64,000 nt of DNA from Mustelus asterias (taxonomy: Eukaryota): NCBI RefSeq assembly GCF_964213995.1, contig NW_027590137.1, positions 1,116,001 to 1,180,000 on the forward strand. Reading direction: 5' to 3'. The position numbers and the translations under genes are program-made. Every line of letters begins with the position of its first letter. Within the stretch, counting starts at the first letter, position 1. Below, one piece after another: positions 5,394 through 49,283 of this stretch. The notes under the pieces were generated by a model that was given only the letters and a program-made list of their open reading frames with translations, did not search any database and was not told the origin of the DNA.

Positions 5394-6521
5394 CCGGGAG
5401 AGACCGTTCTTCTGCTCTGTGTGTGAGAAGACATTCAGTGTTTAATCCCACCTGCTGAGACACCAGCGACTTCATGAGTGATTCCAGGGGTTGGATTCTG
5501 CTGTTATTGTTTCTGCTCTCAATTACATCCAGGACTGCATTTTGTTCATTCTCACAGTTGGTCAATGGGGAGGGTAGGGGGGTTTCTTTCTGCTGGACTG
5601 GCCGGTCTCATGACTTTGCCTCCAGTGGGCTGATGCTCTTTGAGTCTTGTTGCGAATACATGGTTTCAAATTTCACAAGGATCACAGAGTGACAGGGTGT
5701 GAGGAAGTTAAGAGTCACTATTTCTGTTTGAAACTCCCCCAAAAGCCCATCCAATTTCCTTTGTAATTGTTTATTGTCTCCACTTCCTCCACCCTCGTAG
5801 GCAGCGGGTTCCAGGTCATTACCATTCGCTGCATCAAAATATTCTTCCTCACATCCCCCCTGCATCTCTGATCCGAAACCTTAAATCTGTGACCCCCCTC
5901 ATCCTTGTCCCATCAGCGAATGGGAACAGCTTTTTTTTGTCCACCTTATCTAAACCTGTCAGAATCTTGCCCACCTCTATCAAATCTCCCCTCAACCTCC
6001 TTTGCTCCAAGAGGAACGACCCCAGCCTGACATTGACAATAAAGAACAAACTAACCGAATATGTTAATACCTGAAATCAAATTGGAATGTTTAATTTCTG
6101 TTTTAAAGATATTGTGAATATATTGTCCTGGACAATAAAGGAATTTGAATAACTCACCTTGGGTGTGGTTGAATGGAATATATCAATCTGATATCCACCT
6201 ACAGTCTTGTGAAAGTTTGGAATGCGTAGCTGGAAATCGCTCCCTAACAGCACTGTGGGTGTACTTACACCTCAGGCATTGTAGCAGTTCAGGAAGGCAG
6301 TGTTGGGGTTGACCACGGCCGAGGCAGCTACATACAGCCACATATTATGTTATAACTGAAGGACAGCAGATTGAATGTGAGGCATTATGGGACTGGACTA
6401 TCTTGACCACATTCCTGTGGCTGCTCAGTTTCTGCAATCACGGACCATTAAAGCTACTTAGCAGGGCCCTGACAGAGGACCTGGTGAAAATATTTACTCA
6501 GAATGAGTTAGAAGTAAACTG

Positions 6522-16774: not shown

Positions 16775-17030
16775 CATCCTGTCACTCTGTGATCCTTGTG
16801 AAATCTGAAACCAGGTATTCGCAACAAGACTCAAAGAGAATCAGCCCACTGGAGGCAAAGTCGTGAGACCGGCCAGTCCAGCAGAAAGAAACCCTCCGAC
16901 CCTCCCCATTGACCAACTGTGAGAATGAACAAAATGCAGTCCTGGATGTAATTGAGAGCAGAAACAATAACAGCAGAATCCAACCTCTGGAATCACTCGT
17001 GAACTTGTTGGTGTCTCAGCACGGTTCAAA
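16775..17030 (-). pseudogene. ZNF gene relic (end of last finger and conserved 3' UTR)
   Basis: Reverse complement of 5455-5695 and 57735-57965. Confidence 0.8.
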
Positions 17031-17550
17031 CGGAGACCATCCCATCTATACAGGTCCCACCTGCCCAAATACTGGTGCCAATGCCACATGAATTCGAAAC
17101 CATTCCTTCCACTCCAATCCTTGAACAACGCATTCGTCTTCTTAATCCTATTAACCCTGCACCAATTCGCGCGTGGCTCAGGTAGTAATCCAGAGATTAC
17201 CACCTCGTTGGTTCTGCTTTTTAATTTATTCCCTAGCTCTTCGTACTCCCTCTGCAGATCCTTAGTTTCTGTTTTGTCTATGTCATTGGCACCTACATGG
17301 ACCACGACAACTGGTTTTTGACCCTCCCACTCCAGATTCCTCTGCAGCCCAGATGATACATCCTGGACCCGAGCACCAGGCAGGCAACACAACCTACGGT
17401 ATTCCTTATCCTGGTCACAGAGAACAGTGTCTATGCCCTTAACTACACTATCCCCAATTACTACTACGTTTCTCTTTGATTTCTCCATTGCAGCAGCTCC
17501 CTGCACCCTGGTACTGCTGACAGTTTGCTCGTCCTTCTCGCAGTCATATT
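17030..17550 (-). mobile_element. CR1 ORF1 (SGNH esterase-like) fragment
   Basis: VVIGDSVVK, CLPGARV, VHVGAND, DGLRLN motifs. Confidence 0.8.
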
Positions 17551-18364
17551 TCCCATCCTCTTTTGTTGAATTCTAAAAGGCTTCCAATCCTCAGACTTGC
17601 TAATTATTTTGCAATTTTATATATTTTCTATGTAAAATGGAAAGTTCCCGCTCCTGAAGGACATTAGTGAAAAGATTTGACGAAATGTTGGCACCTTTGT
17701 CATTCATATTAATTGCATAAGGATTTTTGTTTCAGCTTCTTCAATGAATTGAATTGAAATTCCCCAGCAACCCGGGTGGAATTTGAACTCCTGTCTCGAG
17801 AGCATTGTTTCAGGATTGTGGATTACGAATTAGTAATTATATACGATACTATATGCTATACTACCTCGAGGAATATCATCACATCTAAAATGGAACAACT
17901 GAAAATACCACTCTCCTTGAGCACAGGACTAAAGGTTGAATCATAAATTCAGGCATCTGTTATGGGAGTTGAACACATTACCATTTGGATGAGAAGCGAT
18001 GTTGATTCCACTAAAAAGAAGACTTTTAGCTGATCACAGTTAGCATTTTGACATTCTGACATTTAGCTCAGTGTGTCTAGAGTTTCGGACCTGTGTGCAG
18101 TATTACACGGATGCATACAGTTTTCAGAAGCTGGCCTTCTCTCTGTACCTCAGAATTTGTAATCTTTCACCGTTTAAATATTAAACGTATTTTATATTCA
18201 TCCTGCCAAATTGGACGTTTTCACAATTGACCACATTATACTCAACTTGGCGGGGCTTTGCCAATTAATTTACTCGATTTATGTCCCTTTATCTTCTTCT
18301 TACACGCACTTCACCATTTATTTAAGACATATCTTTTTCGTTTTCTATCTTTTTCTTTTTCTAA

Positions 18365-19370
18365 ATGGAGGTCGGTCACCAGTGGTGTGCCCCAGGGATC
18401 TGTTCTGGGGCCCTTGCTGTTTGTCATTTTCATAAATGACCTGGATGAGGAAGCGGAGGGATGGGTTGGTAAGTTTGCCGACGACACGGAGGTTGGTGGG
18501 GTTGTGGATAGTCTGGAGGGATGTCAGAAGTTACAGAGGGACATAGATAGGATGCAAGACTGGGCGGACAAGTGGCAGATGGACTTCAACCCGGATAAAT
18601 GCGTAGTGGTCCATTTTGGCAGGTCAAATGGGATGAAGGAGTACAATATAAAGGAAAAGACTCTTAGTACGGTAGAGGATCAGAAGGACCTTGGGGTCCG
18701 GGTCCATAGGACTCTGAAATCGGCCCCGCAGGTGGAGGAGGTGGTTAAGAAGACGTATGGTGTGCTGGCCTTTATCAATCGAGGGATTGAGTTTAGGTGT
18801 CCGGGGATAATGACGCAGCTATATAAGACCCTCGTCAGACCCCACTTGGAGTACTGTGCTCAGTTCTGGTGGCCTCACTATAGGAAGGATGTGGAAAAGA
18901 TTGAAAGGGTGCAGAGGAGATTTACAAGGATGTTGCCTGGATTGAGTGGCATGCCTTATGAGGATAGGCTGAGGGAGCTCGGTCTTTTCTCCTTGGAGAG
19001 ACGAAGGATGAGAGGAGACCTAATAGAGGTGTAGAAGATGTTGAGAGGCATAGATCGGGTGGACTCTCAGAGGCTTTTTCCCAGGGTGGAAATGTCTGCT
19101 ACGAGGGCACACAGGTTTAAGGTGCTGGGGTGTAGGTACAGGGGAGATGTTAGGGGTAAGTTTTTCACACAGAGGGTGGTGGGCGAGTGGAATCGGCTGC
19201 CGTCAGTGGTGGTGGAGGCGAACTCAATAGGGTCTTTTAAGAGACTCCTGGATGAGTACATGGAGCGTAATAGGATGGAGGGTTATAGGTAGGTCTAGAA
19301 GGTAGGGATGTGTTCGGCACAACTTGTGGGCCGAAGGGCCTGTTTGTGCTGTAGTTTTTCTATGTTTCTA
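18365..19370 (+). mobile_element. CR1 LINE 3' fragment (RT C-terminal half)
   Basis: [22 protein letters not shown]; TTTCTATG tail. Confidence 0.9.
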
Positions 19371-20615: not shown

Positions 20616-21047
20616 ATGTTCTCCCAATTTTCTTTCCTAATATTGGTTGGTTTTCCTGCCCGGTGAGTCTGTGTTTAAATAGTCCCTGCCTGTTTCCAGC
20701 GTTCTCCACCAGATATTTAAGAGATTCTGTAATTTGTTGCAGGCAAAGATGAAGTGTCCCAAGATCCCCCTAAATTAACGGTTCAGGAAGGACAGACCAT
20801 AACACTGCACTGCAGTTACTGCTCTGGTACATCCAGTCTCATGGGGAAGCTCCGATTTATTTATTGACGATTTTTAACACAGGAGACATCGCTGAAGATT
20901 CTCCGAATAGATTTTCTGCTGTTTGTACAAAAGAAACAAAGCGGTCCTTTTAAGTATCGCCGGAACGCTTCTCTCTGACAGCGCACTGTATTTCTGTGCC
21001 ATGGAGCCCACACTGGTGCAGAGATATAGCGAACCCCAGACTGGAAA
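20616..21047 (+). pseudogene. TCR alpha/delta-type V-segment pseudogene (leader 20616-20662, V exon from 20743, degenerate RSS)
   Basis: Leader MFSQFSFLILVGFPA then GTGAGT donor. V exon KDEVSQDPPKLTVQEGQTITLHCSY/LWYIQSHGEAPIYLL...NRFSA.../LSIAGTLLSDSALYFCAMEP with two frameshifts. Heptamer CACACTG at 21009-21015, nonamer degenerate. Confidence 0.8.
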
Positions 21048-22399: not shown

Positions 22400-22907
22400 T
22401 GGACACTAAAAATTGGCAAATCATGCTGCAGCTTTATAGAAGCTTAGTTAGGCCGCACTTGGAATATAGTGTTCAATTCTGGTCGCCACACTACCAGAAG
22501 GATGTGGAGCGACGGAGGTTGAGGAGAGACCTGGATAGAAGTCTACAAGATTATGAGAGGCATGGACAGAGTGGATAGTCAGAAGCTTTTTCCCAGGGTG
22601 GAAGAGTCAATTACTCGGGGGCATAGGTTTATGGTGTGAGGGGCAAGGTTTAAAAGAGATGTACGAGGCAGATTTGTTACACAGAGAGTGGTGGGTGCCT
22701 GGAGCTCGTTGCCAGGGGTGGTAGTGGAAGCGGATACGATAGTGACTTTTAAGGGGCGTCTTGACAAGTACATGAATGAGACGGGCATAGAGGGATATGG
22801 TCTCCAGAAGGGTAGGGGGTTTTAGTTAAGTCGGGCAGCATGGTCGGTGCAGGCTTGGAGGGCGAAGGGCCTGTTCCTGTGCTGTAAGTTTCTTTGTTCT
22901 TTGTTCT
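22400..22907 (+). mobile_element. CR1 LINE 3' fragment
   Basis: RPHLEYSVQFWSPHYQKD; (TTCTTTG)n tail. Confidence 0.85.
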
Positions 22908-24334: not shown

Positions 24335-25094
24335 AAGAGAACTTCTGTCGATTTACTTGTTTGGTACTGGTTGTATCAGAAATGCGGGCGGAGCTATGGG
24401 CGTTGTGCGGGCGTGAGTCTGCAATTCCACTCCAGGAGAATATTTCCTGAACTGCAGCGTTGCTGATTCGGGAGAAGGAAGCAGAGGCACAGCAGTCAAT
24501 ATTTTTCACTTTTTCAATTCGCGTTTCCTTCCCAATGAAAAGTAAAGAACATGCTGTTATCCTGACTGTTGTAATTTAGGTATTGCTATTCGTCAAATGA
24601 TGACTACTCTTCTTTTAAAAATTATTAATTGGGCGTCAGTCACAAGACCAAGACTTTGTCGATCACTAATTGTCCTCGAAACGGCCTGGGCAATTTGAGA
24701 GTTAGTTATATGGTTGTTGATCTGTAGTCACACACAGACCAGGCCAGGCTAGGAAGGCAGATTTCCTTCCACAAAGTGCATTAGTGAACCAAGTGGATTT
24801 GCAGTGACTGCGTTCGCAACCATCAATGCGAGTAGCTTTCAATATCAATTAATCACATTTACATTGAACCAGCTGCTGGGGTAGAATTTTGACTGCTTTT
24901 ATCCAAAATCGAATTTAAGTGTAACCAGTTGATATGATGGGATTGAACTACTTTTCCCAAAGCATAATTCTGGGTCCCTGAACTGCTTGTCCAGTGACCC
25001 CATGTTGATAATGATTAAGAAGAAAAAGCGGAAGTTCTTGAAGTTGACTCTTCCCACGATATTATATGAAAATGGGGCCACAACTACAAAGTGC

Positions 25095-25335
25095 ATCTTG
25101 TTGTCCCTGAGTTGACCTTTGAAAAGGCAGTGTCATAATTAGCTGCACCATGACAATTTGATATCCTAACCCTACTGATTTCAGGCATGGTCAGGTTTCA
25201 GTACAGCATCCACAGTACGCGTTTTACATTAGCTCAGGAACAATAAACAGGCAACTAGAGTTCACTGATCGATTTCCCTGTTCCTTTAGTAAAACAACGA
25301 CGATTGCAAAGCCCATCCACCGATATCTGAACATT
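25095..25335 (+). pseudogene. Highly degenerate Ig-superfamily V-domain relic
   Basis: GSVIISCTMTI*...QHPQYAFYISSGTINRQLEFTDRF...TTIAK, with an out-of-frame GCATGG.CAGG (AW-R) at the expected Trp position. Truncated by a CR1 tail before the second Cys. Confidence 0.35.
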
Positions 25336-25817
25336 GGAACATAAAACTTAGGCTGCCTGCGAATCCGCTCGACCCTTCAGTCAGATTACAGTTCATCTGA
25401 TCTTCCTTTTAAATCCACTTTACTGCATTGATCCTCATGAACCGTGACATAAATTTTAGTTAAAATGTTTGTTTTACTCAGCTTTAAAATTTTTCTGTGG
25501 CCCTCAGCCTCCACCGTTCTCTGGACTCTCACTGGAGTCACAGGCACGAATGCTCGGATGCTAAAGCTAAGAGAATGTGCACAGAACATTGATTGGAAAT
25601 CCACCAAATCCATCAACACTCCTTGCCCTTCCGTTCCAATAACAAAATGAAGGTATTTTTCTTGATATCCCGTTTCCAAAGCGGAACAAATCGCCCAACA
25701 GGGACACCGAATGGAGGACAAGTTGGAGAGCTTCCATTCACTGACTGTCATCTTATCAACTACCAATCTCACGGTGGCACTGGTGAGACACGGAATTGAC
25801 GCGTGAGCATTCTGAGA

Positions 25818-25827
25818 CACGTCATCA
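25818..25827 (-). promoter_or_regulatory. CRE-like element upstream of the TCR V leader
   Basis: TGATGACGTG (reverse strand) ~75 nt before the ATG. CRE-like motifs are typical of TCR V promoters. Confidence 0.4.
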
Positions 25828-25900
25828 GATTAATAAGGGTGGGGATTAGAATGGGTGTCTTCAAATATCCGATTCCTCCTTTACAGAGCGGACAGAGACA

Positions 25901-26359
25901 ATGCGGGTACTCGGCATCTGGATTGTGTGGGGGGCATTTCTAACAGGTATTTCTGGACATCACGTATGTTTTCTCATTTCCAAAACTTGGGTTGAATCTT
26001 ACTGTTGAGTGCACGTGACTCTATTCTTTATCTATTTGAACATATTTTCCAGGTCTGACCCATGGAGATTCTGTCACTCAGTCGCTGTCCTCAGATGTTA
26101 AGACAGAAGGAGACGCGGTGACATTAAACTGCAACTATGATACTGCAGAAACCTACTATTATTTATACTGGTACCGACAGCATCCAGACTCCCAGCCCGA
26201 GTACATTCTGAGGAAGTATTCGGGGGGTTATGAAGATAAAGCAGATTTTGCTAAAATCCGTTTCTCGACTGATCTCCAGACCTCGAAGAAATCCATCAGT
26301 TTGACTATCTCGGATCTGCAGTTGTCTGACGCAGCCGCGTATTACTGCGCTTTCAGCAT
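25901..26359 (+). CDS. Intact TCR alpha/delta-type V gene segment (leader exon 25901-25946, V exon 26053-26359)
   Basis: Leader MRVLGIWIVWGAFLTG, phase-1 GT-AG intron. V exon LTHGDSVTQSLSSDVKTEGDAVTLNCNY...YLYWYRQHP...PEYIL...RFS...SISLTISDLQLSDAAAYYCAFS has both Cys, the Trp and DxAxYYC, with no stops. Confidence 0.9.
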
Positions 26360-26398
26360 CACAGTGATGGAAAGCAGTCTGACTCCTGTACAAAAACT
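26360..26398 (+). other. 23-bp-spacer recombination signal sequence
   Basis: CACAGTG (26360-26366), 23-nt spacer, ACAAAAACT (26390-26398). Confidence 0.92.
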
Positions 26399-26775
26399 GT
26401 CTCAGCAAGGCAAGTGAGAGCTCCTCTCTACTGTATAGAACCTCTGGCAGATGCAGCCACAATGAGCAGCGGCGCTGTCAGCCGCTCAAACATGCGCTGA
26501 CAGGAAACCATGTTAACCTCGGATCAACTGTCAGCCAACTGTTTCCAGGAGAGGCTGAGAAAACAAACTGCAGAATCAATTAGGCCGACAGGTCCATCAC
26601 ATAGTCAATGCGTCAATTAAATCGTCCCTTCTGCTACTAATCAGTTCTGTATTCCTCTATAATCAAATCTGGATTTTAAAATCAAGCCGAGAAATAGATT
26701 GCTAACACCAAATATTAGTCAAACCTCGCCGTCAATTGTCACACAGACAGCAGACATACAGCTTACCATGTTTGT

Positions 26776-26860
26776 GGCTCGTTGGTCTGGGGTATGATTC
26801 TCGCTTGGGACAATTGCATTTAGATGCGATAGAACTTGGGTTCGTATCCTGGCCGAGCCT
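26776..26860 (+). tRNA. tRNA-Pro-derived pseudogene with a 14-15 nt intron-like insertion in the anticodon loop
   Basis: GGCTCGTTGGTCT-GGGGTATGATTCTCGCTT matches eukaryotic tRNA-Pro. Insertion ACAATTGCATTTAGA; weakened T-stem; T6 Pol III terminator at 26868-26873. Confidence 0.7.
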
Positions 26861-27359
26861 AAAAAACTTTTTTATGAATAGGATGGGAATCCCGGAAGGG
26901 TCGGGGGTTTAAGTTCAGTCGGGCAGCATGGTTGGTGCAGGCTTGGAGGGCCGAAGGGCCTGTTCCTGTGCTGTAATTTTCTTTGATCTTTGTTCCTCTG
27001 ATTCCGAAGTCCCTATTAAATAGAAACATTCACAGTTTACAAATAAACAGAACAGAAACCTCCCTCGAAACACATCATGATATTCTCCAATAATAGGTAG
27101 CATGAAATTGTTCGAAAATGAACTGATACTGAAGAAAGATTGCCATATTTTCCCATACAGTCTGTACGACGAATGTAAGAAAGAACATGTATGAAAATAG
27201 TTGCAGAGATCGGTTACTGAGTGTCACGAACTCAATAGTAGATATATATGAAAATTCAATGAGAGAATGAATTAATAGCTTAGGAAGGAGAAAGGAGAAT
27301 ATGCAAAGTAACATTTAGATATGCTGGATAAATAAAACAATCTAATTATCTTTCCTCGG

Positions 27360-27644
27360 CTGTGACCCCCATGGATTCCACAGACCACATCTGGATTGAA
27401 GGCAATGAGGATGACAACAGCAACATCTGGACAACCGCTTCCACATTCATCGTCCTGTTCTTCCTGAGCATTTTCTACAGCATTTTCTGGTGAACGTGAG
27501 ATGATTCAATTCACCCACATTTCAAACTGGTAGAAGGGATTGGAAAAATCTCTAAATGTTTCAGAGATTAAAAACTCTAACATTAATGTCCCGCATCATA
27601 AACATCTGCTTCATTGTTGTACCTCTCTTTTACAGATCAAGTGA
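27360..27644 (+). pseudogene. Immunoglobulin heavy-chain transmembrane exons TM1 (27360-27495) and TM2 (coding 27636-27644), damaged
   Basis: VTPMDSTDHIWIEGNEDDNSNIWTTASTFIVLFFLSIFYS carries the IgH CART motif. A duplicated AGCATTTTCT frameshifts before LVN|GTGAG. TM2 reads TTTTACAG|ATC AAG TGA (IK*). TM1 acceptor is GG rather than AG. AATAAA at 28008 and 28045. Confidence 0.85.
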
Positions 27645-28834
27645 CGGGTTGAATTTTGGACGCTGTAGATTTCCCTCGGTGACTCAAACAGTATATTATC
27701 TCAGCTTATCATTCTGCACCTGTAACTAAGACAAGCGTGTTCGGTATTTCAGTTTTCAATATGAAATGTACGAGGGATTTCTTTTTGTTGTAATGCAAAC
27801 TATAGTTGATAGTTTCCCTGTAGTTTAAATTTCATGTACACATTTTTCTCGTTTCTTATTCACAATTGTTCATTTCCAGATATGTTTAGCTCCCTTTAAT
27901 CATTCTTGTGTCTGTAACAGCTGTACATATATTGGACAGCTCGGAGCAGATGTGTTCTATTCGAAATATGAAGCTAAATCTTTATGTGCACTTTTGTCAA
28001 CTTTAAAAATAAACTCTTCTATTCAACGTTCTCTGAAAATTTAAAATAAATCTTGAATGAAAAATCAACCAATTCTGACTTTTCTTAACTCCTTTCGCCA
28101 AAGCCCATCGACACAGCTCCATTTTCCGATTACACGGTTACCCCCTTTTCCCAGAAAGGTATTTTTCCCCAGTCCTGTCTGGGACGTGGCTGAACTCAAG
28201 GCTGTTCAGTGAACGAGTCACTGCGCCACCCAGTGAATCATCTGTGTAAGGACACTTCACGTCTGCCTTTTTGATGATAAACTCCAGAGACAGAACGATT
28301 GAACAGCGAGGAGAACCTCGGTGATTTGACACATGAACTGGTCGGTCACCTTCGAGTGTCAAGCAATTCTCAACAGCAAAGGCTCTGCTTCATCAGAGGC
28401 CGATACAGCGCAGTATATGGAAGAATAAATCTTCCTTTACACTGTCCCACCTAACACTGCAAAGATCGCTGCAATGTTGGGAAGCAGAGTAAAACTCTCT
28501 CCCGATTGTCCAATTAATTACTTCAAAGGCAGGGACGCCACCGGCTAGATGATAAAACTCGGGGAGAACAGTGGCGTATTAACCATGAGAGACTGGGATG
28601 TTTACCGCAAAGACATGTAATCGAGTACACATTTCCAAACGATTGCCAGCGTTTGGGGCCTATGAGATATACTCGGGGAAAACACGCAGAAATTCCCAGA
28701 TTCCGAGATCAATCTGAAACAACAAATATGCAGAAATTATGGGAAGTGATCCCAGAGAATACGGCTTGTTCTGATACCGACACTCCAGCTTCGCATTTTC
28801 TCTTAGTGACACAGATAGATATGTTGTCCCCATG

Positions 28835-30070
28835 TCCTGATAAATGCGAAGTGATGCATTTTGGTGGGAATAATGTAGGGAGGAGCTACACGATAAATGG
28901 AAGAACCATAAAGGGACCTGGGTGTGCAAGTCCACAGATCTTTGAAGGTGACGTCACAGGTGGAGAAGGTGGTGAAGAAGGCATATGGCATGCTTGCCTT
29001 TATAGGACGGGGCATAGACTATAAAAGTTGGGGTCTGATGTTGCAGATGTATAGAACGTTGGTTCGGCCGCATTTGGAATACTGCGTCCAGTTCTGGTCG
29101 CCACACTACCAGAAGGACGTGGAGGCTTTGGAGAGAGTACAGAGGAGGTTTACCAGGATGTTGCCTGGTATGGAGGAGCTTGGTTATGAGGAGAGATTGG
29201 GGAAACTGGGGTTGTTCTCCTTGGAAAGACGGAGGATGAGGGGAGACTTAATAGAGGTGTATAAAATTATGAATGGCAAAGATAGGGTGAACGGTGGGAA
29301 GCTTTTCCCCGGGTCGGTGGTGACGTTCACGAGGGGTCATAGGTTCAAGGTGAAGGGGGGGAGGTTTAACACAGATATCAGAAGGACATATTTTACACAG
29401 AGGGTCGTGGGGGCCTGGAATGTGTTGCCGGGCAAGGTGGTGGAGGCGGACACACTGGGAACGTTTAAGACTTATCGAGACAGCTATATGAACGGAGTGG
29501 GAATGGAGGGATACAAAAGAGTGGTCTAGTTTGGACCAGGGAGCGGCGCGGGCTAATTGTTCTTTGTTTCTCGTTTCAAGGCTTCATTCTATGATCATCT
29601 TGCTGGTGCCAGTACAGAGCGAGACTGCGGATAGTTGGGAACCTGTCTCGGGGGCAGGGAATTCAGATGGTGTTCGTAAAACAGAAGTGGAAATGAATAG
29701 GGTTGGGAAGCATTTTCTGATCAGGGCCAGTGTGATCTCCTGGACTCGTTTCGATCGCCACAGGGGGTCGGAGAGGAATTTCCCAGATTTTCTTTTCCCC
29801 ATATTGGCCCTGGGGTTTTCACTCTGGGTTTTCGCCTCTCCCTGGAGATCACATGGTCTGGACTGGGGGGGTGGGGGTGAGTTAATAGGTTGTGATGAAC
29901 AAAGCATCGTAGCTGTGAGGGACAGCTCGGTGGATAGGATATTAGGATGTAGATAGGCTGGAAAATTGGGCGGGGATCCTGGATTCAGGATTCAATCCTG
30001 GACCGGGGAGCGGCGCGGGCTTGGAGGGCCGAAGGGCCTGTTCCTGTGCTGTATTGTTCTTTGTTCTTTT
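28835..30070 (+). mobile_element. CR1 LINE 3' fragment with extended 3' UTR
   Basis: ORF 28924..29529 is the CR1 RT C-terminus; TTCTTTG tail at ~30060. Confidence 0.85.
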
Positions 30071-30410: not shown

Positions 30411-30597
30411 NNNNNNNNNNNNNNNNNNNNNNNNNNNNNNNNNNNNNNNNNNNNNNNNNNNNNNNNNNNNNNNNNNNNNNNNNNNNNNNNNNNNNNNNNN
30501 NNNNNNNNNNNNNNNNNNNNNNNNNNNNNNNNNNNNNNNNNNNNNNNNNNNNNNNNNNNNNNNNNNNNNNNNNNNNNNNNNNNNNNNNNNNNNNNNN
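30411..30597. other. Assembly gap (187 N)
   Basis: Run of N. Confidence 1.
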
Positions 30598-32915: not shown

Positions 32916-34611
32916 CATGCCGAGAGTTTCCATTGCCTGGGAGAGGAACGTGCAGTTTAAGTAGAGACTGTTGCCCGGGATGCGCCAGTGTGTGTGTTTA
33001 AGACGCAAAAGTAGGGGAATTAAGGGTTATGGGAGCAGGCGGGTAAGTGGAACTGATTCACTTCAGATCAGCCATGATCTTATTGAATGGCGGGGCAGGC
33101 TCGAGGGGCTAGATGGCCTACTCCTGCTCCTATTTCTTATGTTCTTATGTAGAAGTATTTCCTGGAGTCCTCAGCTGTCACCGGTGCAACTGTCAGACTG
33201 ATGATTCTGTAAGTTTTGCTCAGGGAGGAGGAAAAGCGACGCCTGGAAAATGTGGCGCTGTCGCTGAAACCGTCAGTGCAGCGGATGAGAATATACTCGG
33301 GACTCCCACCCCCATGGCTGGGTGGAGAGGTTCCCGGCACCAGACCAAACAAGCCCTCTCCACCTCTGTGGAGGAGCAGGCGATGGTCATGGTGGCTCCC
33401 TGCTGGACCCTCACCTCTGCCTCTGGCTGGTGGATGACTGCGGATGCAGCCAGGCTACCTGAAGGATAGAGAAAATTAGAATTAAGTGGAGGTTCCAGCC
33501 ACTCTATCGATTTGAAGCTGGGGAGGTGCGAGGGAGGGGGAGGATAGGGTCGGCCCAATGGAGGGTGGCCCCAGCTTCCACTGTAGGCATCGTGCTGCCC
33601 TTGGAGGTAGCCAGCAGTCGCGGTTATGCCCTGTGAGTGCATCAGTACCATTGCACGAAGCTGAGCAGGAGGGTGGTGCTCCTTGGTGTGCCGCCTGGCC
33701 AGAGACTTGAAGGATTAAGGTCTGGCTAGATCAATATCTACAACATGTATCCAAAACCAAATGAGGTGTGGGATGGAATTTGAGTTGATACCCGACCATG
33801 TTTTTAATTCGATGGCAGCATTTCAAATTTGTTAACGCAGAAACAGGCCATTCGGCCCATGGGCTTTTGCTGGCGTTTATTCACCCCAACTCCACTTCTT
33901 CTCAAACTATCAGATTTGATGCCTATTACTCTTTCTCTCCACCTGAAAGCCTCCCTGTGATATATAAACACTGTTCATGTCACATAGTCCATGTTCTACA
34001 GTTCCACGTTCTCACCATTCACTTAAGGAATTAAAACATGCTTCGCCTAAATCCCACACTAATGGCTCTGTGATTTGTTCTGTCCTGGGATATGAGTCGC
34101 GAGACTGAGCCAGTATTTACTGCCCCTGCTTAATTGCCCCCCTTGAGAAGAGAGTGAGGAGCTGCCTTCCTGGAGTGCTGTGTGTCCAGGTGCACAAGGT
34201 ACACTCAACAGTACTTTTAGGGGGAAAGTGATGTCCCCCATGGTTTTGACCCAGCGACAGTCGCAGAAAGGTGATTTTAGCTTCATGGATGTGTGTGGAT
34301 TGGAGGGAATACTGCAGGCGATGCTTTTCGTGTCCATATGCATCAAATTTATTTCCAAGTGCTGGATGTTTTGGGTTCGGAAGGCAGTGTCGAAGGAGTG
34401 TTTGGTGAACTGTTCATATCTATGATAGGTTTGCCTTTTCTCACTACTGAAGTTTTTAAATAACTATTTGTAAAATTCCAATCATTAAGTAAACTCAGTC
34501 ACTAGTAATATTGCTGTGTACTTGTCTCGAAAGGTCAACATTAAATATAAGAGTATAAAATAATTTATTGAAACGAAATCAATGAGAATCACTAAATTAA
34601 CTTGATTTATC

Positions 34612-36720: not shown

Positions 36721-37780
36721 ACTGATCATCAGTATTGTTAATACTGTAACTAAATAGTTTATTTTCAGTAATCGGGTTATTATATCACACAAGGAGTCCA
36801 TTCAGCAACTCAAGTCCATGCTAACTCTCTGTAGAGCAATCCAGTCAGTCCCATTCCCCCTTAAGTTCATAAGATATAGGAGCATAATTAGGCTATTTGG
36901 CCCATCGAGTCCACTCCGCCATTCAATCATGGCTGATATGTTCCTCATCCCGTCTGTATCCCTGTTCCCCTGCCAGTCTATTTTGACTGCCCATCTAATT
37001 TCATTTTGAAATATTGAATGTATCAAAATGCACCGCCCTCATAGCCAAAAAATTGATATTCAAGAATGTTCACTGTCGAAATAATGTTCTATCTCATAGC
37101 CTTGCTGTACTTCTATTTATTAAACTGGTCCCCGATGTTACATACATTTTACTTCGCTAAGTATATTTAGGTATTTAGACTCGCAGCCTGCATGAAGATA
37201 TCTCAGTGCTGGAGAAGAAGCAGTGAGCATGGATTTGTTGATCAGCATGAATCAACACCTTCAGGAGAATTGGAAGGGTGTATTATACAGACAGCAGAGT
37301 GAGGATACAGGGATAGGGTGTGGGATGGAGATGTACAGATCCAGAGGAACGAGAAAGGAAGAAATGTTCCACAGAAACTAGAATTGTCTATTCTGAATTT
37401 CTGTTTGATACTGACAGTGATGACTTTTGTAAACTCATTTTACAGGAAGTTATAAGGGGAAGATTTGCTGCCAGCAATCTCAAAACATGTTAATGCTTAA
37501 TAGAGTCACTCAAATGATCAGAACCTGAATATCATCAGACCTTGAATCTAGAAGAAGAAATATTTATCTGTTTTTTCTGTCACATCAGTGTGACTGGAAA
37601 GGCACCAAGGAACACAGAGCTGAGTGAGAGTGTCCAGTACACTGACTGTCAAAAGACCAGTGACACAGACTGCAAAAATATCACATCATTTACAGCGGGG
37701 ACAGACAGTGCACATGCTCTATGTGTGGATGAGGATTTAACTGATTGTTAAACCTGGAAAGACACAAGGACATCCACACC

Positions 37781-38995
37781 ATGGAGAAACCGGGGAAAGA
37801 TGAGGATTGTGGTAAGGAATTCCATATCCCGTCTGCACTGCAAACTCATCAACATATTCACACTGGGGACAGACTGTTCCCCTGCATCAAGCGTGGGGAA
37901 GGAGACTGCTCCCCATCTGCCCTGAAGATTCATCAATGCAGCCACACTGGGGAGAGGCCCTTCATCTGCTCTGAGTGTGGGAAGGGTTTTCTCCAGGCAG
38001 CCGACCTGTGGAATCACCAAGCAGTTCACAGTAGGGAGAGGCTGTACACCTGCTCTGAGTGTGGGAAGGGATTCACTCAGTTATCCCACCTGCTGACACA
38101 CCAGCAAATTCACACTGGGGAAAAACCGTTCAACTGCTCTGAGTGTGGGAAGCAATTCAATCATTCATCTGAACTTTTGAATCACCAACAAATCCACACC
38201 GGAGAGCGACCATTCACCTGCTCCGACTGTGGAAAGGGTTTCACTCAGTCATCTCACCTGCAGATACACCAGCGAGCCCACACTAAGGAGAGGCCTTTCA
38301 ACTGCTCTGAGTGCGGGAAGTGTTTTATTCAATTATCACACCTAGTGACTCACCAGGGAGTCCACAGGAGGGAGAGGCCGTTCCCCTGCTCCGAGTGTGG
38401 GAAGCGTTTTATTCAGTTATCACACCTAGTGACACACAAAGGAACCCACACAAGGGAGAGGCCATTCAGCTGCCCCGAATGTGGGAAACGTTTTATCCAA
38501 TCGTCACACCTAATGTCACACCAGGGAGTTCACAGCAGGGAGAGGCCATTCGTCTGCTCCGAGTGTGGGAGGCGTTTTATTCAATCATCCCACCTAGTGT
38601 CACATCAGGAGGTTCACACCAGGGAGAGGCCATTTCCCTGTTCCGAGTGTGGCAGGGGATTCATTCAGTTATCCGACCTGCAGAATCACCAGCAAGTTCA
38701 CACCGGGGAGAGGCCGTTCACCTGCTCTGAGTGTGGGAAGGGATTCACTCGTTCAGCTAACCTGCAGGCACACCGACGTGTTCACACCAGGGAGAGACCA
38801 TTCACCTGCTCTGAGTGTGGGAAAGGATTCGCTCTTTCATCTTATCTGCAGAGTCACCAGCAAGTTCACACTGGAGAGAGGCCGTTTATCTGCTCTGAGT
38901 GTGGAAAGGGATTCATTCAGTCATCCCACCTGCAGACACACCAGCGAGTTCACAAGGATTCACAAAGGGATTCACTCGGTCATCCCACCTGCTGA
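37781..38995 (+). CDS. C2H2 zinc-finger protein B (12 intact plus 2 degenerate fingers)
   Basis: CACCATGGAGAAACCG start; tandem C-x2-C-x12-H-x3-H. Upstream exon ends at 37277, acceptor at 37444-37445. Confidence 0.88.
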   Translation: MEKPGKDEDCGKEFHIPSALQTHQHIHTGDRLFPCIKRGEGDCSPSALKIHQCSHTGERPFICSECGKGFLQAADLWNHQAVHSRERLYTCSECGKGFTQLSHLLTHQQIHTGEKPFNCSECGKQFNHSSELLNHQQIHTGERPFTCSDCGKGFTQSSHLQIHQRAHTKERPFNCSECGKCFIQLSHLVTHQGVHRRERPFPCSECGKRFIQLSHLVTHKGTHTRERPFSCPECGKRFIQSSHLMSHQGVHSRERPFVCSECGRRFIQSSHLVSHQEVHTRERPFPCSECGRGFIQLSDLQNHQQVHTGERPFTCSECGKGFTRSANLQAHRRVHTRERPFTCSECGKGFALSSYLQSHQQVHTGERPFICSECGKGFIQSSHLQTHQRVHKDSQRDSLGHPTC

Positions 38996-40104: not shown

Positions 40105-43100
40105 TAGACACAAGCTTTAGGAATACAGTTACTCCGAGGATTGAAAACAGATGGGTGACGGTGAGAGGGGCTGGGAGGAAGCAGTCTGTGCAGGGATCCC
40201 CGGTGGTCGTTCCCCTTAGCAACAAGTATTCCGCTTTGGATACGGTTGAGGGGGATGACATACCAGTGGGGAGCCGCAGTGAGAGGATCTCCAGCACTGT
40301 GTCCGTCTCTGTGGCTCGGGAGGGAAAGGGGGAGAGCGGGAGGGCGATAGTTATTGGGGACTCGTTAGTTAGAGGGATAGATAGGAGGTTCTGTGGCAGC
40401 AAAAGAGACTCACGGATGGTATGTTGCCTACCGGATGCCAAGGTCCGTGATGTCTCAGACCGTGTTTTCCAGATTCTGAAGGGGGAGGGGAAACAGTCAC
40501 AAGTCGTGGTGCACATTGGTACCAATGACATAGGTAAGAGAAGGGACGGGGATTTAAAGCAGGAATTTCTGGAGCTGGGCTGGAAGCTGAGAGCCAAGAC
40601 GAAACATGGGGTCATCTCTGGTACGTTGCCGGTACCACGTGATAGCGAGTTGAGGAACAGGGAGAGAGTGCAGTTAAATATGTGGTTGCAGGGATGGTGT
40701 AGGAGGGAGGGTTTCAGATACGTGGATAATTGGAACACGTTCTGGGGAAGGTGGGACCTGTACAAACAGGACGGGGTGCACCTGAACCAGAGGGGCACCA
40801 ATATCCTCGGAGGGAAATTTGTTACGGCTCTTCAGGGGGGTTTAAACTAATTTGTCAGGGGAGTGGGAAAGGGAGTTGTAGTCCAGAAGTCAGTGAGGGT
40901 GGTGAGGTATTGGGGAAGGTATCAGGGTCAAGGGTGGGTACTGGTAGACAGGAAGGTGGGTTGAAGTGTGTCTACTTCAATGCAAGGAGCATCCAGAACA
41001 AGGTCGATGAACTTGGGGCGTGGATTGGTACTTGGGACTACGATGTTGTGGCCATTACGGAGACGTGGGTAGAACAAGGACAGGAATGGTTGTTGGACGT
41101 TCCGGGGTATAGATGTTTCACTAAGTGTAGGGAAGCTGGTAAAAGAGGTGGAGGAGTGGCATTGTTAATCAAGGATAGTTTAACGGCTGCGGAAAGGCAC
41201 TTCGTGGGGGATCTGCACACTGAGGTAATATGGGCTGAAGTTAGAAATAGGAAAGGAGCGGTCACGTTGCTAGGAGTTTACTATAGGCCCCCAAATAGTA
41301 ATAGAGATGTGGAGGAAGAAATTGCTAAGCAGATTATGGATATGTGTGGGGGTCACAGGGTAGTTGTCATGGGGGACTTTAACTTTCCAAATATTGATTG
41401 GAACCTTTGTAGGTCAAATAGTTTGGATGGGGCAGTTTTTGTACAGTGTGTGCGGGAGGGTTTCCTGACACAATATGTGGATGGGCCGACTAGAGGTGAG
41501 GCCACATTGGATTTGGTACTGGGAAATGAACCGGGCCAAGTGTTAGATTTGGTTGTGGGAGAGCAATTTGGAGATAGTGACCACAATTCGGTGTCTTTTG
41601 TTATTGCAATGGAGAGGGATAGGGCCGTACGGCAGGGCAAGGTTTACAATTGGGGGAGGGGTAATTATGATGCGATTAGGCAAGAATTAGGGGGCATAAG
41701 TTGGGAACAGAAACTGTCAGAGAAAGGAACTAATGAAAAGTGGAACTTTTTCAAGGAACAAATACTGGATGTCCTTGATAGGTATGTTCCTGTCAGGCAG
41801 GGAGGAAATGGCCGAGTGAGGGAATCATGGTTCACAAAAGAGGTGGAATGTCTTGTGAAAAGGAAGAGGGAAGCTTATGTAGGGATGAGGAAACAAGGTT
41901 CAGATGGCTCGATTGAGGGTTACAAGTTAGCAAGGAATGAGCTGAAAAAGGGGCTTAGGAGAGCTAGGAGGGGACATGAGAAGTCCTTGGCGGGTCGGAT
42001 CAAGGAAAACCCCAAGGCTTTTTACTCTTATGTGAGGAATAAAAGAATGACCAGGGTGAGGTTAGGGCCGGTCAAGGACAGTAGTGGGAACTTGTGTATG
42101 GAGTCAGTAGAGATAGGCGAGGTGATGAATGAATACTTTTCTTCAGTGTTCACCAAGGAGAGGGGCCATGTTTTTGAGGAAGAGAAGGTGTTACAGGCTA
42201 ATAGGCTGGAGGAAACAGATGTTCGGAGGGAGGATGTCCTGGCAGTTTTGAATAAACTGAAGGTCGATAAGTCCCCTGGGCCTGATGAAATGTATCCTAG
42301 GATTCTGTGGGAGGCAAGGGATGAGATTGCAGAGCCTTTGGCGTTGATCTTTGGGTCCTCGCTGTCCACGGGGATGGTGCCAGAGGACTGGAGAATGGCG
42401 AATGTTGTTCCTCTGTTTAAGAAAGGGAATAGAAATGACCCTGGTAATTATAGACCGGTTAGTCTTACTTCGGTGGTTGGTAAATTGATGGAAAGGGTCC
42501 TTAGGGATGGGATTTACGACCATTTAGAAAGATGCGGATTAATCCGAGATAGTCAGCACGGATTCGTGAAGGGCAAGTCGTGCCTCACAAATTTGATAGA
42601 ATTTTTTGAGGAGGTAACTAAGTGTGTTGATGAAGGTAGGGCAGTTGATGTCATATACATGGATTTTAGTAAGGCGTTTGATAAGGTCCCCCATGGTCGG
42701 CTTATGATGAAAGTGAGGAGGTGTGGGATAGAGGGAAAGTTGGCCGATTGGATAGGTAACTGGCTGTCTGACCGAAGACAGAGGGTGGTGGTCGATGGAA
42801 AATTTTCAGATTGGAGGCAGGTTGCTAGCGGTGTGCCGCAGGGATCAGTGCTTGGTCCTCTGCTCTTTGTGATTTTTATTAATGACTTAGAGGAGGGGGC
42901 TGAAGGGTGGATCAGTAAATTTGCTGATGACACCAAGATTGGTGGAGTAGTGGATGAGGTGGAGGGCTGTTGTAGGCTGCAAAGAGACATAGATAGGATG
43001 CAAAGCTGGGCTGAAAAATGGCAAACGGAGTTTAACCCTGATAAATGTGAGGTGATTCATTTTGGTAGGACAAATTTAAATGTGGATTACAGGGTCAAAG

Positions 43101-43823
43101 GTAGGGTTCTGAAGACTGTGGAGGAACAGAGAGATCTTGGGGTCCATATCCACAGATCTCTAAAGGTTGCCAGTCAAGTGGATAGAGCTGTGAAGAAGGC
43201 CTATAGTGTATTAGCTTTTATTAAGAGGGGGTTGGAGTTTAAGAGCCGTGGGGTTATGCTGCAACTGTACAGGACCTTGGTGAGACCACATTTGGAATAT
43301 TGTGTGCAGTTCTGGTCACCTCACTATAAGAAGGATGTGGAAGCGCTGGAAAGAGTGCAGAGGAGATTTACCAGGATGCTGCCTGGTTTGGAGGGTAGGT
43401 CATATGAGGAAAGGTTGAGGGAGCTAGGGCTGTTCTCTCTGGAGCGGAGGAGGCTGAGGGGAGACTTAATAGAGGTGTATAAAATGATGAAGGGGATAGA
43501 TAGAGTGAACGTTCAAAGACTATTTCCTCGGGTGGATGGAGCTATTACAAGGGGGCATAACTATAGGGTTCGTGGTGGGAGATACAGGACGGATATCAGA
43601 GGTAGGTTCTTTACGCAGAGAGTGGTTGGGGTGTGGAATGGACTGCCTGCAGTGATAGTGGAGTCAGACACTTTAGAAACATTTAAGCGGTTATTGGATA
43701 GGCACATGGAGCACACCAGGATGATAGGGAGTGGGATAGCTTGATCTTGGTTTCAGATAAAGCTCGGCACAACATCGTGGGCCGAAGGGCCTGTTCTGTG
43801 CTGTACTGTTCTATGTTCTATGT
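40105..43823 (+). mobile_element. Young, 5'-truncated CR1 LINE: partial ORF1 (SGNH esterase, stop at 40850) and uninterrupted ORF2 (APE endonuclease + RT, stop at 43744)
   Basis: ORF1 GDS/GTND/DGVHLN; ORF2 [29 protein letters not shown]; (TTCTATG)n tail; TSD TCACCA (40099-40104 and 43824-43829). Confidence 0.95.
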
Positions 43824-48202: not shown

Positions 48203-48533
48203 CATAGAATCCCTACAGTGCAGAAGGAGGCCATTCGGCCCATCGAGTCTGCACCAATCACAATCCCACCCAGGCCCTACCCCCACATATTTACCCACTA
48301 ATCCCTCTAACCTACACATCTCAGGACTCAATGGGGCAATTTTTAACCTGGCCAATCAACCTAACCCGCACATCTTTGGACTGTGGGAGGAAACCGGAGC
48401 ACCTGGAGAAAACCCACGCAGACACGAGGAGAATGTGCAAACTCCCCACAGACAGTGACCCGAGCTGGGAATCGAACCCAGGACCCTGGAGCTGTGAAGC
48501 AGCAGTGCTAACCACTGTGCTACCGTGCCGCCC
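48203..48533 (-). mobile_element. HE1-type SINE at the truncated end of ZNF C
   Basis: Near-identical to 16345-16680. Confidence 0.88.
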
Positions 48534-48560
48534 ATGTGGGATAGGGCCTGGGTGGGATTG

Positions 48561-49283
48561 TTTACTTTTAAAGCTCTTCTCACAGTCAGAATACTGAAAT
48601 GGTCTCTTATCAGAGTGAACTCGCTGGTGTGTTTGCAGCTGGGATAAACATCCGAATCTCCTCTCACACACGGAGCAGGTGAATGGCTTCTCCCCAGTGT
48701 GAGTGCGCTGATGGACTTGTAAATCATTTTTACTTTTAAATCTCTTCTCACAGTCAGAACATTGAAATGGTCTCTGCTCAGTGTGAACAAGTTGGTGTGT
48801 CAGAAGGTGGGATGACTGAATGAATCCCTTCCCACACTCTGAGCAGGTGAACGGTCTCACCGCCATGTGAGTGCGCTGGTGTCTCAGGAGGTCCTTTGTG
48901 CTTTTAAAGCTTTTCTCACAATCAGAACACTGAAACAGTCTCTGATCGGAGTGAACTTGCCGGTGAATCAGGAGGCTTGATAAAGCATGACACCCCCTCC
49001 CACATTCGAGGCAGGTGAACGGCCTCTCACCAGTGTGAACACGTCGGTGTGTATAGAGGCTGGATGAGTAAGCAAATCCTTTCCCACACTCAGAGCAGGT
49101 GAACGGCCTCTCTCCAGTGTGAATGCGACGATGAATATCCAATTCGGACGGGTAATTGAATCTCCTCCCACAGTCCACACATTTCAATGGTTTCTCTGTG
49201 GTGTGGGTGTCCTCGTGTGACTCCAGGTTGGATGATGAGTTGATGCCTTGTTTACACAGAATATGTGTCGGGTCACTACTCAC
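48561..49283 (-). pseudogene. C2H2 zinc-finger gene C (7 fingers; family start codon absent; 3' end replaced by SINE)
   Basis: HTTEKP where paralogs have MEKP. The eighth finger is cut and reads into SINE sequence. Confidence 0.7.

What the first reader, a model, noticed from the sequence alone, without database searches (positions are those of the whole stretch)
25901..28050. Intact TCR V segment ~1 kb upstream of IgH transmembrane exons, with a phase-compatible splice path to a non-rearranged single-V membrane receptor
Seen: leader + V + 23-RSS, followed on the same strand by IgH TM1/TM2 and poly(A) signals, with no D, J or C exon between them. The V frame stays open through the RSS (CAFSITVMESSLTPVQKLSQQ) to AAG|GCAAGT at 26409/26410, a consensus GC-type donor in phase 1. 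TM1 has lost its native acceptor (GG at 27358-27359), but an internal TTCCACAG| at 27383 is also phase 1. Joining them would give L-V-stalk-DHIWIEGNEDDNSNIWTTASTFIVLFFLSIFYSIFW*, still carrying a ~22-aa hydrophobic anchor. Known: sharks mix Ig and TCR parts (NAR-TCR, IgH-V/TCR-delta rearrangements), but those place Ig-type V on TCR constant regions; this is the opposite polarity. Inference: either a germline-encoded TCR-V/Ig-TM chimeric receptor or a chance juxtaposition of duplicated debris.
Basis: partly seen in the sequence, partly recalled or inferred. Interest (0 to 1): 0.85.

Follow-up and report, generated by a model that had tools for sequence, protein, structure and literature searches.

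The report
Antibody membrane-exon relic beside TCR V
A normal-looking shark T-cell-receptor V gene segment lies 1 kb upstream of a broken leftover of an antibody heavy-chain membrane anchor, which is most likely duplicated genomic debris and not a new kind of receptor.

Summary
The sequence features are real. There is a leader, intron, V exon and canonical 23-RSS at 25901-26398 (TCR alpha/delta-type V). An IgM-type TM1/TM2 pair with poly(A) signals lies at 27374-28050. No D, J or C exon lies between them, and no Cmu exon is anywhere in the window.

The functional reading is not supported:
- TM1 has no AG at its native start. Protein alignment puts that start at 27374, not at 27358-59.
- TM1 is 7 nt short, which gives a premature stop.
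- The "phase-compatible path" carries no weight, because AG sites for all three phases lie ahead of the hydrophobic core.
- A canonical GT donor (26413|26414, phase 2) overlaps the proposed GC donor.
- Four poly(A) hexamers lie between V and TM1.
- The unrearranged V lacks a J-encoded last strand.

No RNA run exists for this organism here, so splicing was not tested. I read it as the 3' end of a decayed IgM cluster next to an ordinary rearranging V. Published work places TCR alpha/delta-type V exons between elasmobranch IgH clusters.

The scan has noted the same thing on other DNA of this genome: s1-891416 (V ~1 kb upstream of orphan TM exons) and s1-890432 and s1-891853 (orphan TM exons in TCR V / NAR-TCR arrays). 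I could not check these notes. Interest is low to moderate.

The parts
25901..25946 (+). Leader exon of the V gene segment (46 nt, ends in phase 1; donor CAG|GTATTT)
   Evidence: Sequence read; leader resembles that of the expressed TCR chain P0001
25947..26052 (+). Leader intron (106 nt, GT..AG)
26053..26359 (+). V exon, TCR alpha/delta type, with Cys23, WYRQ and YYC intact
   Evidence: Pfam V-set E 1.2e-16. Best single-domain PDB matches are TCR alpha and V delta 1. It is the only ORF in the window that fits the strict V motif
26360..26398 (+). 23-RSS: heptamer CACAGTG, 23-nt spacer, nonamer ACAAAAACT (8 of 9)
   Evidence: the only such match in the window, both strands
26360..26417 (+). Read-through of the V frame across the RSS to TGA at 26415.
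26776..26860 (+). tRNA-like stretch (Pro-like, with 16 extra nt in the anticodon loop); not a called tRNA gene
   Evidence: Rfam tRNA 21.2 bits, below the gathering score of 29, E 0.066; ARAGORN 0 genes
26892..26995 (+). Very high-copy interspersed repeat tail (SINE/LINE 3' end)
   Evidence: Summed contig depth in the millions over 26838-27004. It is 92% identical to 22804-22906. The tail motif has 3 copies in the window
27374..27495 (+). IgM-type TM1 pseudo-exon. It keeps the acidic spacer and the hydrophobic core. It has no AG at its native start, is 7 nt shorter than the 43-codon TM1 of bamboo-shark IgM, and stops at TGA 27491. The donor AAC|GTGAGA is kept
27496..27635 (+). TM1-TM2 intron (140 nt) retained, so the relic is a DNA-level copy and not a processed pseudogene
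27636..27644 (+). TM2 relic (ATC AAG TGA) behind a good acceptor, TCTCTTTTACAG|
   Evidence: compare VK-stop in P0008 and P0014
27645..28050 (+). 3' untranslated region of the relic, with AATAAA at 28008 and 28045
20617..21010 (+). Upstream V pseudogene (leader, intron, frame-shifted V, degenerate RSS)
   Evidence: Sequence; weak tblastn FR3 hits at 20929-21003
33146..33457 (-). V relic on the opposite strand, frame-shifted and cut off in FR3 by a repeat insertion

Best explanation
This is an island of antigen-receptor gene debris in a zinc-finger and retroelement-rich stretch of an elasmobranch genome. It holds four receptor-related pieces:
- One apparently functional, ordinary rearranging TCR alpha/delta-type V gene segment: leader, V exon and canonical 23-RSS.
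- The orphaned 3' end of a decayed IgM heavy-chain cluster, 1 kb downstream on the same strand. It runs from the end of the Cmu4-TM1 intron through TM1, the TM1-TM2 intron, TM2 and the 3' UTR with its poly(A) signals.
- Two further decayed V segments nearby.

The TM piece is a pseudo-exon pair. TM1 has no AG at its native start, and a net 7-nt loss shifts the frame and ends it early.

Shown: the identity and state of each element.

Inferred: the adjacency arose by a DNA-level deletion or unequal exchange. This removed VH, D, J and Cmu1-4 of an IgM cluster that lay next to a TCR-type V. The exchange may have happened at the interspersed repeat now at 26776-26995. The V itself works, if at all, by ordinary V(D)J joining to distant segments. 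No V-TM protein is made.
For: V segment:
- It is intact, with a canonical 23-RSS.
- Its closest named-type relative is an expressed V-J-C TCR chain, P0001, at 54% identity.

TM relic:
- It is IgM-type: 83% identity to bamboo-shark IgM over 36 residues, E 1.45e-12.
- It also matches the Heterodontus IgH TM peptide and the human membrane mu chain, E 1.5e-6.
- The native TM1 start is at 27374 by alignment, and no AG precedes it.
- TM1 here is 121 nt (27375-27495, if the first base of the Asp codon comes from the upstream exon as in the phase-1 reading). The 43-codon TM1 of P0008 implies 128 nt. The result is a frame shift and a TGA at 27491. The LVN|GTGAGA end is still visible in another frame.
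- The TM1-TM2 intron is retained.
- There is no Cmu match in the window.

Surroundings:
- A high-copy repeat lies between V and TM.
- Two other broken V segments lie in the island.
- C2H2 zinc-finger arrays and reverse-transcriptase fragments lie around it.

Reads:
- Contigs at least 95% alike pile up about 10-20 fold over the V block and about 4-36 fold over TM1-TM2.
- The stretch 26671-26837 between them stays at the single-contig level.
- This fits two separately duplicated blocks. The tool warns that depth is not copy number.

Print: PMC12227049, section 6 (read in full), states that TCR alpha/delta-type V exons lie between IgH clusters in four elasmobranch genomes.
Against: - No RNA data could be laid, so transcription and splicing across the pair are untested.
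- Other first-stage notes, which I could not check, report the same V-1 kb-TM arrangement on another piece of this genome (s1-891416). They also report open, splice-intact orphan TM1+TM2 pairs in a TCR V array and behind a NAR-TCR cassette (s1-890432, s1-891853). A recurrent association could mean more than debris.
- The relic is still 83% identical in protein to a functional IgM TM of another species and keeps a 22-residue hydrophobic stretch.
- The proposed deletion mechanism is inference.
- No target-site duplication of 7 nt or more flanks the repeat, which does not decide the matter either way.
Confidence: 0.8

Rival explanations
1. The unrearranged V is spliced from the GC site at 26409|26410 to the AG at 27383, making a germline-encoded, C-less, single-V membrane receptor on an IgM anchor.
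For: - Both sites exist and are both phase 1.
- The joined frame would keep a 22-residue hydrophobic stretch.
- Poly(A) signals follow.
- A same-sized cassette is noted on another piece of the genome (s1-891416, not checked).
Against: - Phase fit is uninformative. Of the 6 AG sites between 27300 and 27440, 4 lie between the upstream in-frame stop and the hydrophobic core. They cover all three phases: 27384 and 27402 are phase 1, 27410 is phase 0, and 27421 is phase 2. Each of the 11 GT/GC sites in the V tail therefore has a partner.
- A canonical GT donor 4 nt downstream (CAA|GTGAGA, phase 2) would compete with the GC site.
- Four poly(A) hexamers (26616, 27015, 27042, 27331) precede TM1.
- The read-through tail has no FGXG motif. 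By established knowledge of V domains, the domain would therefore lack its J-encoded last strand.
- TM1 carries two lesions, and the charged VK end is lost.
- In the one other copy seen, the ORF P0003, the 15 residues across the RSS are identical. The 5 codons at the proposed donor hold 2 changes and a frame change.
- None of the 12 proteins matching the TM peptide is a V-TM protein without a C domain.
Confidence: 0.03
2. The pair is transcribed as a sterile (germline) V transcript that runs or splices into the relic and uses its poly(A) signals. This would be a non-coding by-product of locus opening, or a decay-targeted one, with no receptor function.
For: - Germline V transcripts start at the V promoter, splice the leader intron, read through the RSS with an open frame, and are polyadenylated some hundred bases downstream. 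This is described for human VH5 (PMC2190842, abstract read).
- Sterile transcripts of unrearranged shark Ig genes are mentioned in PMC5192425 (passage in section 14 read).
- The V here has intact splice sites and downstream poly(A) hexamers.
Against: - No RNA data.
- Earlier poly(A) hexamers at 26616, 27015, 27042 and 27331 would probably end such a transcript before TM1.
Confidence: 0.1
3. The adjacency is an assembly misjoin at the very high-copy repeat (26838-27004).
For: No listed contig of the four runs bridges 26932-27058. The contigs that fit without a mismatch end inside the repeat at 26932, and the next listed piece starts at 27058 (table 8).
Against: - The repeat piece is only about 100-170 nt long, which long reads cross easily.
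- The contigs are short-read unitigs and break at any repeat, so their failure to bridge says little.
- A first-stage note reports the same arrangement on another piece (s1-891416, not checked).
Confidence: 0.04

Closest known systems
Membrane exons (TM1/TM2) of elasmobranch IgM heavy-chain clusters (bamboo shark GCC19654.1 = P0008; Heterodontus TM peptide AAB20992.1 = P0014)
   Same: Both have an acidic spacer, the WTTASTF...LFFLSIFYS core, a short intron, a two-codon TM2 with stop, and a 3' UTR with AATAAA.
   Different: Here there are no Cmu exons upstream and no AG at the native exon start. A net 7-nt loss gives a premature stop, and the AAVTLVK-VK end is lost.
TCR alpha/delta V gene segments
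   Same: Split leader in phase 1, V-set domain with the canonical Cys/Trp/Cys, a 23-RSS, and best similarity to TCR alpha and delta V domains.
   Different: Nothing differs in the segment itself. Its surroundings are zinc-finger genes and repeats, not a dense V array. No J or C lies in the window.
TCR alpha/delta-type V exons lying between IgH clusters in the elasmobranch antigen-receptor complex (PMC12227049, section 6 read)
   Same: A TCR-type V lies next to IgH-cluster material on one chromosome stretch.
   Different: The paper describes whole clusters. It does not mention orphan TM exons in the passages I read. Its table S1 is a supplement that I could not open. Here only the 3' end of a cluster is left.
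NAR-TCR, TAILV and IgH-V to TCR-delta trans-rearrangements in sharks
   Same: They mix Ig and TCR parts in the same linkage group (PMC12227049, section 15 passage read).
   Different: Those put an Ig-type or NAR V on a TCR constant region and are expressed. Here a TCR-type V lies before an Ig anchor, with no constant domain and no evidence of expression.
Germline (sterile) V transcripts (human VH5, PMC2190842, abstract read)
   Same: An open frame runs from the leader through the RSS, with poly(A) sites downstream of an unrearranged V.
   Different: In VH5 the frame ends in the nonamer. Here it ends 17 nt after the nonamer. Transcription is not shown here.

Membership tests
TCR alpha/delta V gene segment | Split leader with a phase-1 intron, followed by a V-set domain with Cys23, Trp41 and Cys104 | tested here: met
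   (V-set E 1.2e-16)
TCR alpha/delta V gene segment | Recombination signal with a 23-nt spacer directly after the V coding end | tested here: met
   CACAGTG, 23-nt spacer, ACAAAAACT
TCR alpha/delta V gene segment | Closer to TCR alpha/delta V than to Ig V | tested here: met
   the single-domain hits for TCR alpha (76.1 bits) and V delta 1 (75.2 bits) exceed the per-domain antibody scores (22-35 bits in the two alignments shown). No tree was built.
TCR alpha/delta V gene segment | Used in rearranged, expressed TCR chains | not testable with these tools
   No RNA run. A relative at 54% identity (P0001) is a V-J-C chain.
Functional IgH membrane exons (TM1/TM2) | Conserved TM core and acidic spacer | tested here: met
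Functional IgH membrane exons (TM1/TM2) | AG acceptor at the native TM1 start | tested here: not met
   By alignment the native start is 27374. The preceding bases read TGG. This is inferred from protein alignment; no genomic IgM TM1 was available.
Functional IgH membrane exons (TM1/TM2) | Open frame through the ...AAVTLVK end into TM2 (VK-stop) | tested here: not met
   Net 7-nt loss and TGA at 27491
Functional IgH membrane exons (TM1/TM2) | Constant-domain exons upstream on the same strand | tested here: not met
   There is no match to P0008 residues 1-423 at E <= 0.01. At E <= 50 nothing is collinear.
   The tail after the Cys is AFSITVMESSLTPVQKLSQQGK, with no FGXG.
   none of the 4 listed runs is on record as RNA.: all four are contigs of DNA-like coverage.
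   acceptors for all three phases are present, and a competing canonical GT donor overlaps the GC site.
NAR-TCR / TAILV-type chimeric chains | Ig-type or NAR V joined to a TCR constant region | tested here: not met
   The V is TCR-type. No TCR C was found in the window, although only the first ~40 C residues of P0001 were available as a probe.
tRNA-Pro gene | Called by tRNA finders at their thresholds | tested here: not met
   ARAGORN 0 genes; Rfam 21.2 bits, below 29

The most novel reading that the evidence does not exclude
Orphan IgM-type TM1-TM2 exon pairs form a small family scattered through this shark's TCR V and NAR-TCR arrays. The copy studied here is a decayed member. First-stage notes describe open, splice-intact copies elsewhere.

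The pairs would be footprints of an IgM cluster that once entered the TCR V region and was then co-amplified with it. The intact copies could still serve as alternative terminal exons, giving C-less membrane-anchored V products.

I rate the functional part as unlikely. The 'family of footprints' part is likely but less surprising.
Probability: 0.07. Interest if true: 0.65.

Novelty: new member of a known kind. Interest (0 to 1): 0.25.

Why it matters
If the relic reading holds, the locus is ordinary. It is one more piece of decayed IgH cluster next to a TCR-type V, which is expected where IgH clusters and TCR alpha/delta V exons are interleaved (PMC12227049).

It has some value as a marker. 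Orphan IgM membrane exons inside TCR V territory record DNA exchange of whole cluster pieces, not only of V exons. This bears on how Ig-like V segments and NAR domains moved between Ig and TCR loci.

A genome-wide survey of these orphan TM pairs would be cheap and could date those exchanges. A true C-less V-TM receptor would be remarkable, but nothing found here supports it.

Tried and rejected
RNA test. The look-up of sequencing runs listed 4 runs, none on record as RNA. Read laying showed DNA-like contigs only. The joints listed all start inside the high-copy repeat (26925-26995), with short sides of 20-28 nt, and I treat them as repeat artefacts.

I could not see an intact IgM TM1 acceptor, the contig of P0003, or the gene behind P0011.

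Metagenome scans.
- With the TM alignment, 590 pattern matches gave none confirmed.
- With the V read-through, 209 pattern matches gave 1 confirmed, L001. It is only 33% identical, and I neither read it further nor used it.

The missing G strand is argued from sequence and from general knowledge of V domains, not from a model.

Cmu remnants. tblastn at E <= 50 gave only scattered weak hits, the best at E 0.30 at 41231-41371. None was collinear upstream of TM1, so I rejected them.

Target-site duplication around the repeat. Nothing of 7 nt or more was found, which is uninformative.

Processed pseudogene. Rejected, because the 140-nt TM1-TM2 intron is retained.

RAG-mediated germline joining as the cause of the adjacency. 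Rejected, because the V keeps its whole RSS.

Literature.
- Searches found no paper describing orphan IgH TM exons in a shark TCR V array.
- The search concerned germline V transcripts and led to PMC2190842.
- The library lacks most subscription journals, and supplements were closed. Table S1 of PMC12227049 may list such elements.

Spliced model. I did not build or search the joined L-V-TM model. The exons were searched apart, and the phases were worked out by arithmetic on coordinates.

Species. The species was not identified.
Full report
What is there.

The + strand between 25901 and 26398 carries a complete V gene segment.
- The leader is 46 nt and ends in phase 1 (donor CAG|GTATTT). A 106-nt intron follows, and the V exon starts at 26053.
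- A recombination signal comes directly after the coding end: heptamer CACAGTG at 26360-26366, a 23-nt spacer, and nonamer ACAAAAACT at 26390-26398.
- A scan of both strands of all 64 kb for heptamer, 12- or 23-type spacer, and nonamer (at least 7 of 9) found only this one.
- A strict V-domain motif found only this ORF.
- The V exon matches Pfam V-set at E 1.2e-16.
- Among solved structures, its best single-domain matches are a TCR alpha chain (76.1 bits) and V delta 1 (75.2 bits). The antibody constructs listed above them owe their totals to two to four V domains of 22-35 bits each, in the two alignments shown.
- The closest protein in the large collection, P0001 (54% identity), is a V-J-C chain with a similar leader and an FGDGTKLTV J motif.
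- I therefore read this as an ordinary TCR alpha/delta-type V segment.

The membrane exons.

The translated stretch 27359-27490 matches the human membrane mu chain in the Protein Data Bank at E 1.5e-6 over the conserved core. The two higher rows are a designed repeat protein with 5-bit stretches and are spurious.

Against 1.84 billion representatives, 12 proteins reached E <= 0.001. The best is P0008 (E 5.3e-10, 81% identity).
- P0008 and P0009 are bamboo-shark (Chiloscyllium punctatum) IgM heavy-chain models.
- P0014 is the 43-residue Heterodontus IgH TM peptide.
- The other named hits are IgH-like genes of a caecilian, a toad, a sturgeon and a chimaera.

tblastn places P0008 residues 424-459 on 27374-27481 at 83% identity, E 1.45e-12.

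Both P0008 and the Heterodontus peptide begin aligning at the Asp codon at 27374. The bases in front read TGG, so no AG acceptor exists for either a phase-0 or a phase-1 start.

At the 3' end the copy is 121 nt long, against the 128 nt implied by the 43-codon TM1 of P0008.
- The frame shifts after ...SIFYS and stops at TGA 27491.
- The old end is still legible in another frame as ..LVN, followed by the donor GTGAGA.

The 140-nt intron, the TM2 acceptor, ATC AAG TGA (27636-27644) and two AATAAA sites (28008, 28045) follow. The retained intron rules out a processed pseudogene.

No part of Cmu1-4 is detectable anywhere in the window.

Between and around.

Between V and TM1 lie a tRNA-like stretch and a very high-copy repeat tail.
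- The tRNA-like stretch (26776-26860) stays below threshold: Rfam 21.2 against 29 bits. ARAGORN calls no tRNA gene, and no Rfam family reaches its gathering score in the window.
- The repeat tail (26892-26995) is 92% identical to 22804-22906. Summed read-contig depth over 26838-27004 is in the millions.

The island also holds two other V remains.
- A frame-shifted V pseudogene lies at 20617-21010 on the + strand.
- A V relic lies at 33146-33457 on the - strand. It is frame-shifted and cut off in FR3 by a repeat.

Around the island are C2H2 zinc-finger arrays and reverse-transcriptase fragments.

Is the splice path more than chance?

No. In the V tail, from 26340 to the stop at 26415, there are 11 GT or GC sites.

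Between the in-frame stop upstream of TM1 (the frame is open back to 27332) and the hydrophobic core there are four AG sites. They cover all three phases: 27384 and 27402 are phase 1, 27410 is phase 0, and 27421 is phase 2. Any donor would therefore have found an in-phase acceptor that keeps the anchor.

Further points against the path:
That site would be expected to compete.
- Four poly(A) hexamers (26616, 27015, 27042, 27331) lie before TM1.
- An open frame through the RSS is not special. The abstract of PMC2190842 reports it for human germline VH5 transcripts.
- In alignment A1, 3 of the 7 homologues (P0003, P0005, P0006) run on for tens of residues past the conserved Cys without a J motif, as gene models that read through an RSS would (the reading-through is my inference).
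- P0003 is an ORF from an unnamed 1220-nt contig, the one other close copy seen. Its 15 residues across the RSS are identical to the window's. The five codons at the proposed donor carry two changes and a frame change.

Would the product work?

From general knowledge of V domains, the last beta strand with its FGXG motif comes from J. The read-through tail AFSITVMESSLTPVQKLSQQGK has no such motif. The anchor would end at ...FYSIFW without the basic VK end.

None of the 12 proteins that match the TM peptide is a V-TM protein without a constant domain. The shortest with a V is P0011, a VH-D-J-Cmu1-TM model of 276 residues.

Reads.

Only four runs hold the stretch, all from one study, and none is on record as RNA. 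Laid on 24500-29500, they behave as DNA.
- Contigs that fit without a mismatch, of even depth (about 30-50 in X1), tile intergenic sequence.
- Nextera adaptor ends appear as loose ends in X3 and X4.
- Summed depth of contigs at least 95% alike is about 10-20 times that level over the V block (25836-26503). It is about 4-36 times over TM1-TM2 (27339-27672) and about 2-3 times over 27005-27338.
- It stays at the single-contig level over 26671-27837's first part, 26671-26837.
- This fits a multi-copy V family and multi-copy IgM-type TM exons that were duplicated separately. It also fits a relic that is still very close to its relatives.
- The tool warns that such depth is not copy number, so I use it only as a hint.
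- No listed contig bridges 26932-27058, so these data do not confirm contiguity across the repeat.

Context in print.

[quoted passage not shown] It states that some V exons of TCR alpha/delta type lie between the IgH clusters.

A TCR-type V next to IgH-cluster material is thus a known arrangement. I found no mention of orphan TM exons there or in the searches.

Earlier notes of this scan (leads only, none checked except where said).
- s1-892951 describes the same island. I confirmed its extra V remains.
- s1-891416 reports an intact TCR V about 1 kb upstream of orphan IgH TM exons on another piece of this genome. It has the same span of 2150 letters, so it may be a paralogue or the other haplotype.
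- s1-890432 and s1-891853 report open, splice-intact orphan TM1+TM2 pairs of 278 letters, in a TCR V array and behind a NAR-TCR cassette. Adding the missing 7 nt to the 270-nt unit here (27375-27644) gives 277, which fits those being intact paralogues.
- s1-891830 reports an L-VD-J-Cmu1-TM1-TM2 gene. The bamboo-shark model P0011 has that same architecture.

Verdict.

The elements are real and correctly identified, apart from the position of the lost acceptor and the 'tRNA'.

The best explanation (confidence 0.8) is a decayed 3' end of an IgM cluster left beside an ordinary rearranging TCR-type V. It probably arose by a deletion or unequal exchange, perhaps at the interspersed repeat; that last step is inference.

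| Alternative reading | Confidence |
|---|---|
| Chimeric-receptor reading | about 0.03 |
| Sterile transcript running into the relic | about 0.1 |
| Assembly misjoin | about 0.04 |

The recurring presence of orphan IgM TM exons in TCR V territory is the one aspect worth a genome-wide follow-up.

Noticed in passing
P0011 (bamboo shark GCC37862.1; not in the window): A 276-residue predicted protein with leader, VH, D-J, Cmu1 and then directly the IgM TM. It is a one-constant-domain membrane heavy chain, the same architecture that note s1-891830 reports in this genome. It could be a real short IgM form or a gene-model artefact.
   Followed up: partly
window 20617-21010 (+): A TCR-type V pseudogene: leader, intron, V exon with several frame shifts, a YFCAME end and a degenerate RSS.
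   Followed up: partly
window 33146-33457 (-): A V relic on the opposite strand. It is frame-shifted and cut off after ...EDSRKYF by an interspersed repeat.
   Followed up: partly
window 25817-25824 (+): An ACACGTCA motif about 77 nt upstream of the V start codon. It resembles the cAMP-response-like core that I recall from TCR V promoters. The resemblance is recalled and was not tested.
   Followed up: no
window 4600-5400, 37745-38992, 57136-57759 (+) and about 48500-49250: C2H2 zinc-finger arrays with an 84-nt period (24 copies in family D1). Two ORFs were confirmed by Pfam, at E 4e-86 and E 1e-52. The V/TM island is embedded in a zinc-finger gene cluster.
   Followed up: partly
window 18231-19031 (+), 16844-17572 (-): Retroelement pieces. 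One is a reverse-transcriptase fragment (RVT_1, E 3.9e-13). The other is an ORF with a sub-threshold GDSL-esterase-like match (29.2 bits, below the 32.9 cut-off), as in some LINE ORF1 proteins (recalled).
   Followed up: no
window 42603-43821 / 61162-62380 and 43036-43816 / 51318-52098: Long inverted repeat pairs (1219 nt at 91% and 781 nt at 97%), probably copies of one retroelement in opposite orientation.
   Followed up: no
window 30411-30597: A run of 187 N, 2.4 kb downstream of the relic. It was left untouched. Contiguity beyond it is not assured.
   Followed up: no
P0003 (unnamed JGI contig of 1220 nt; not in the window): An ORF that is 87% identical to the second half of this V and reads on through the RSS and the 3' flank. 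It shows a close copy of this V and its flank in some public sample.
   Followed up: partly
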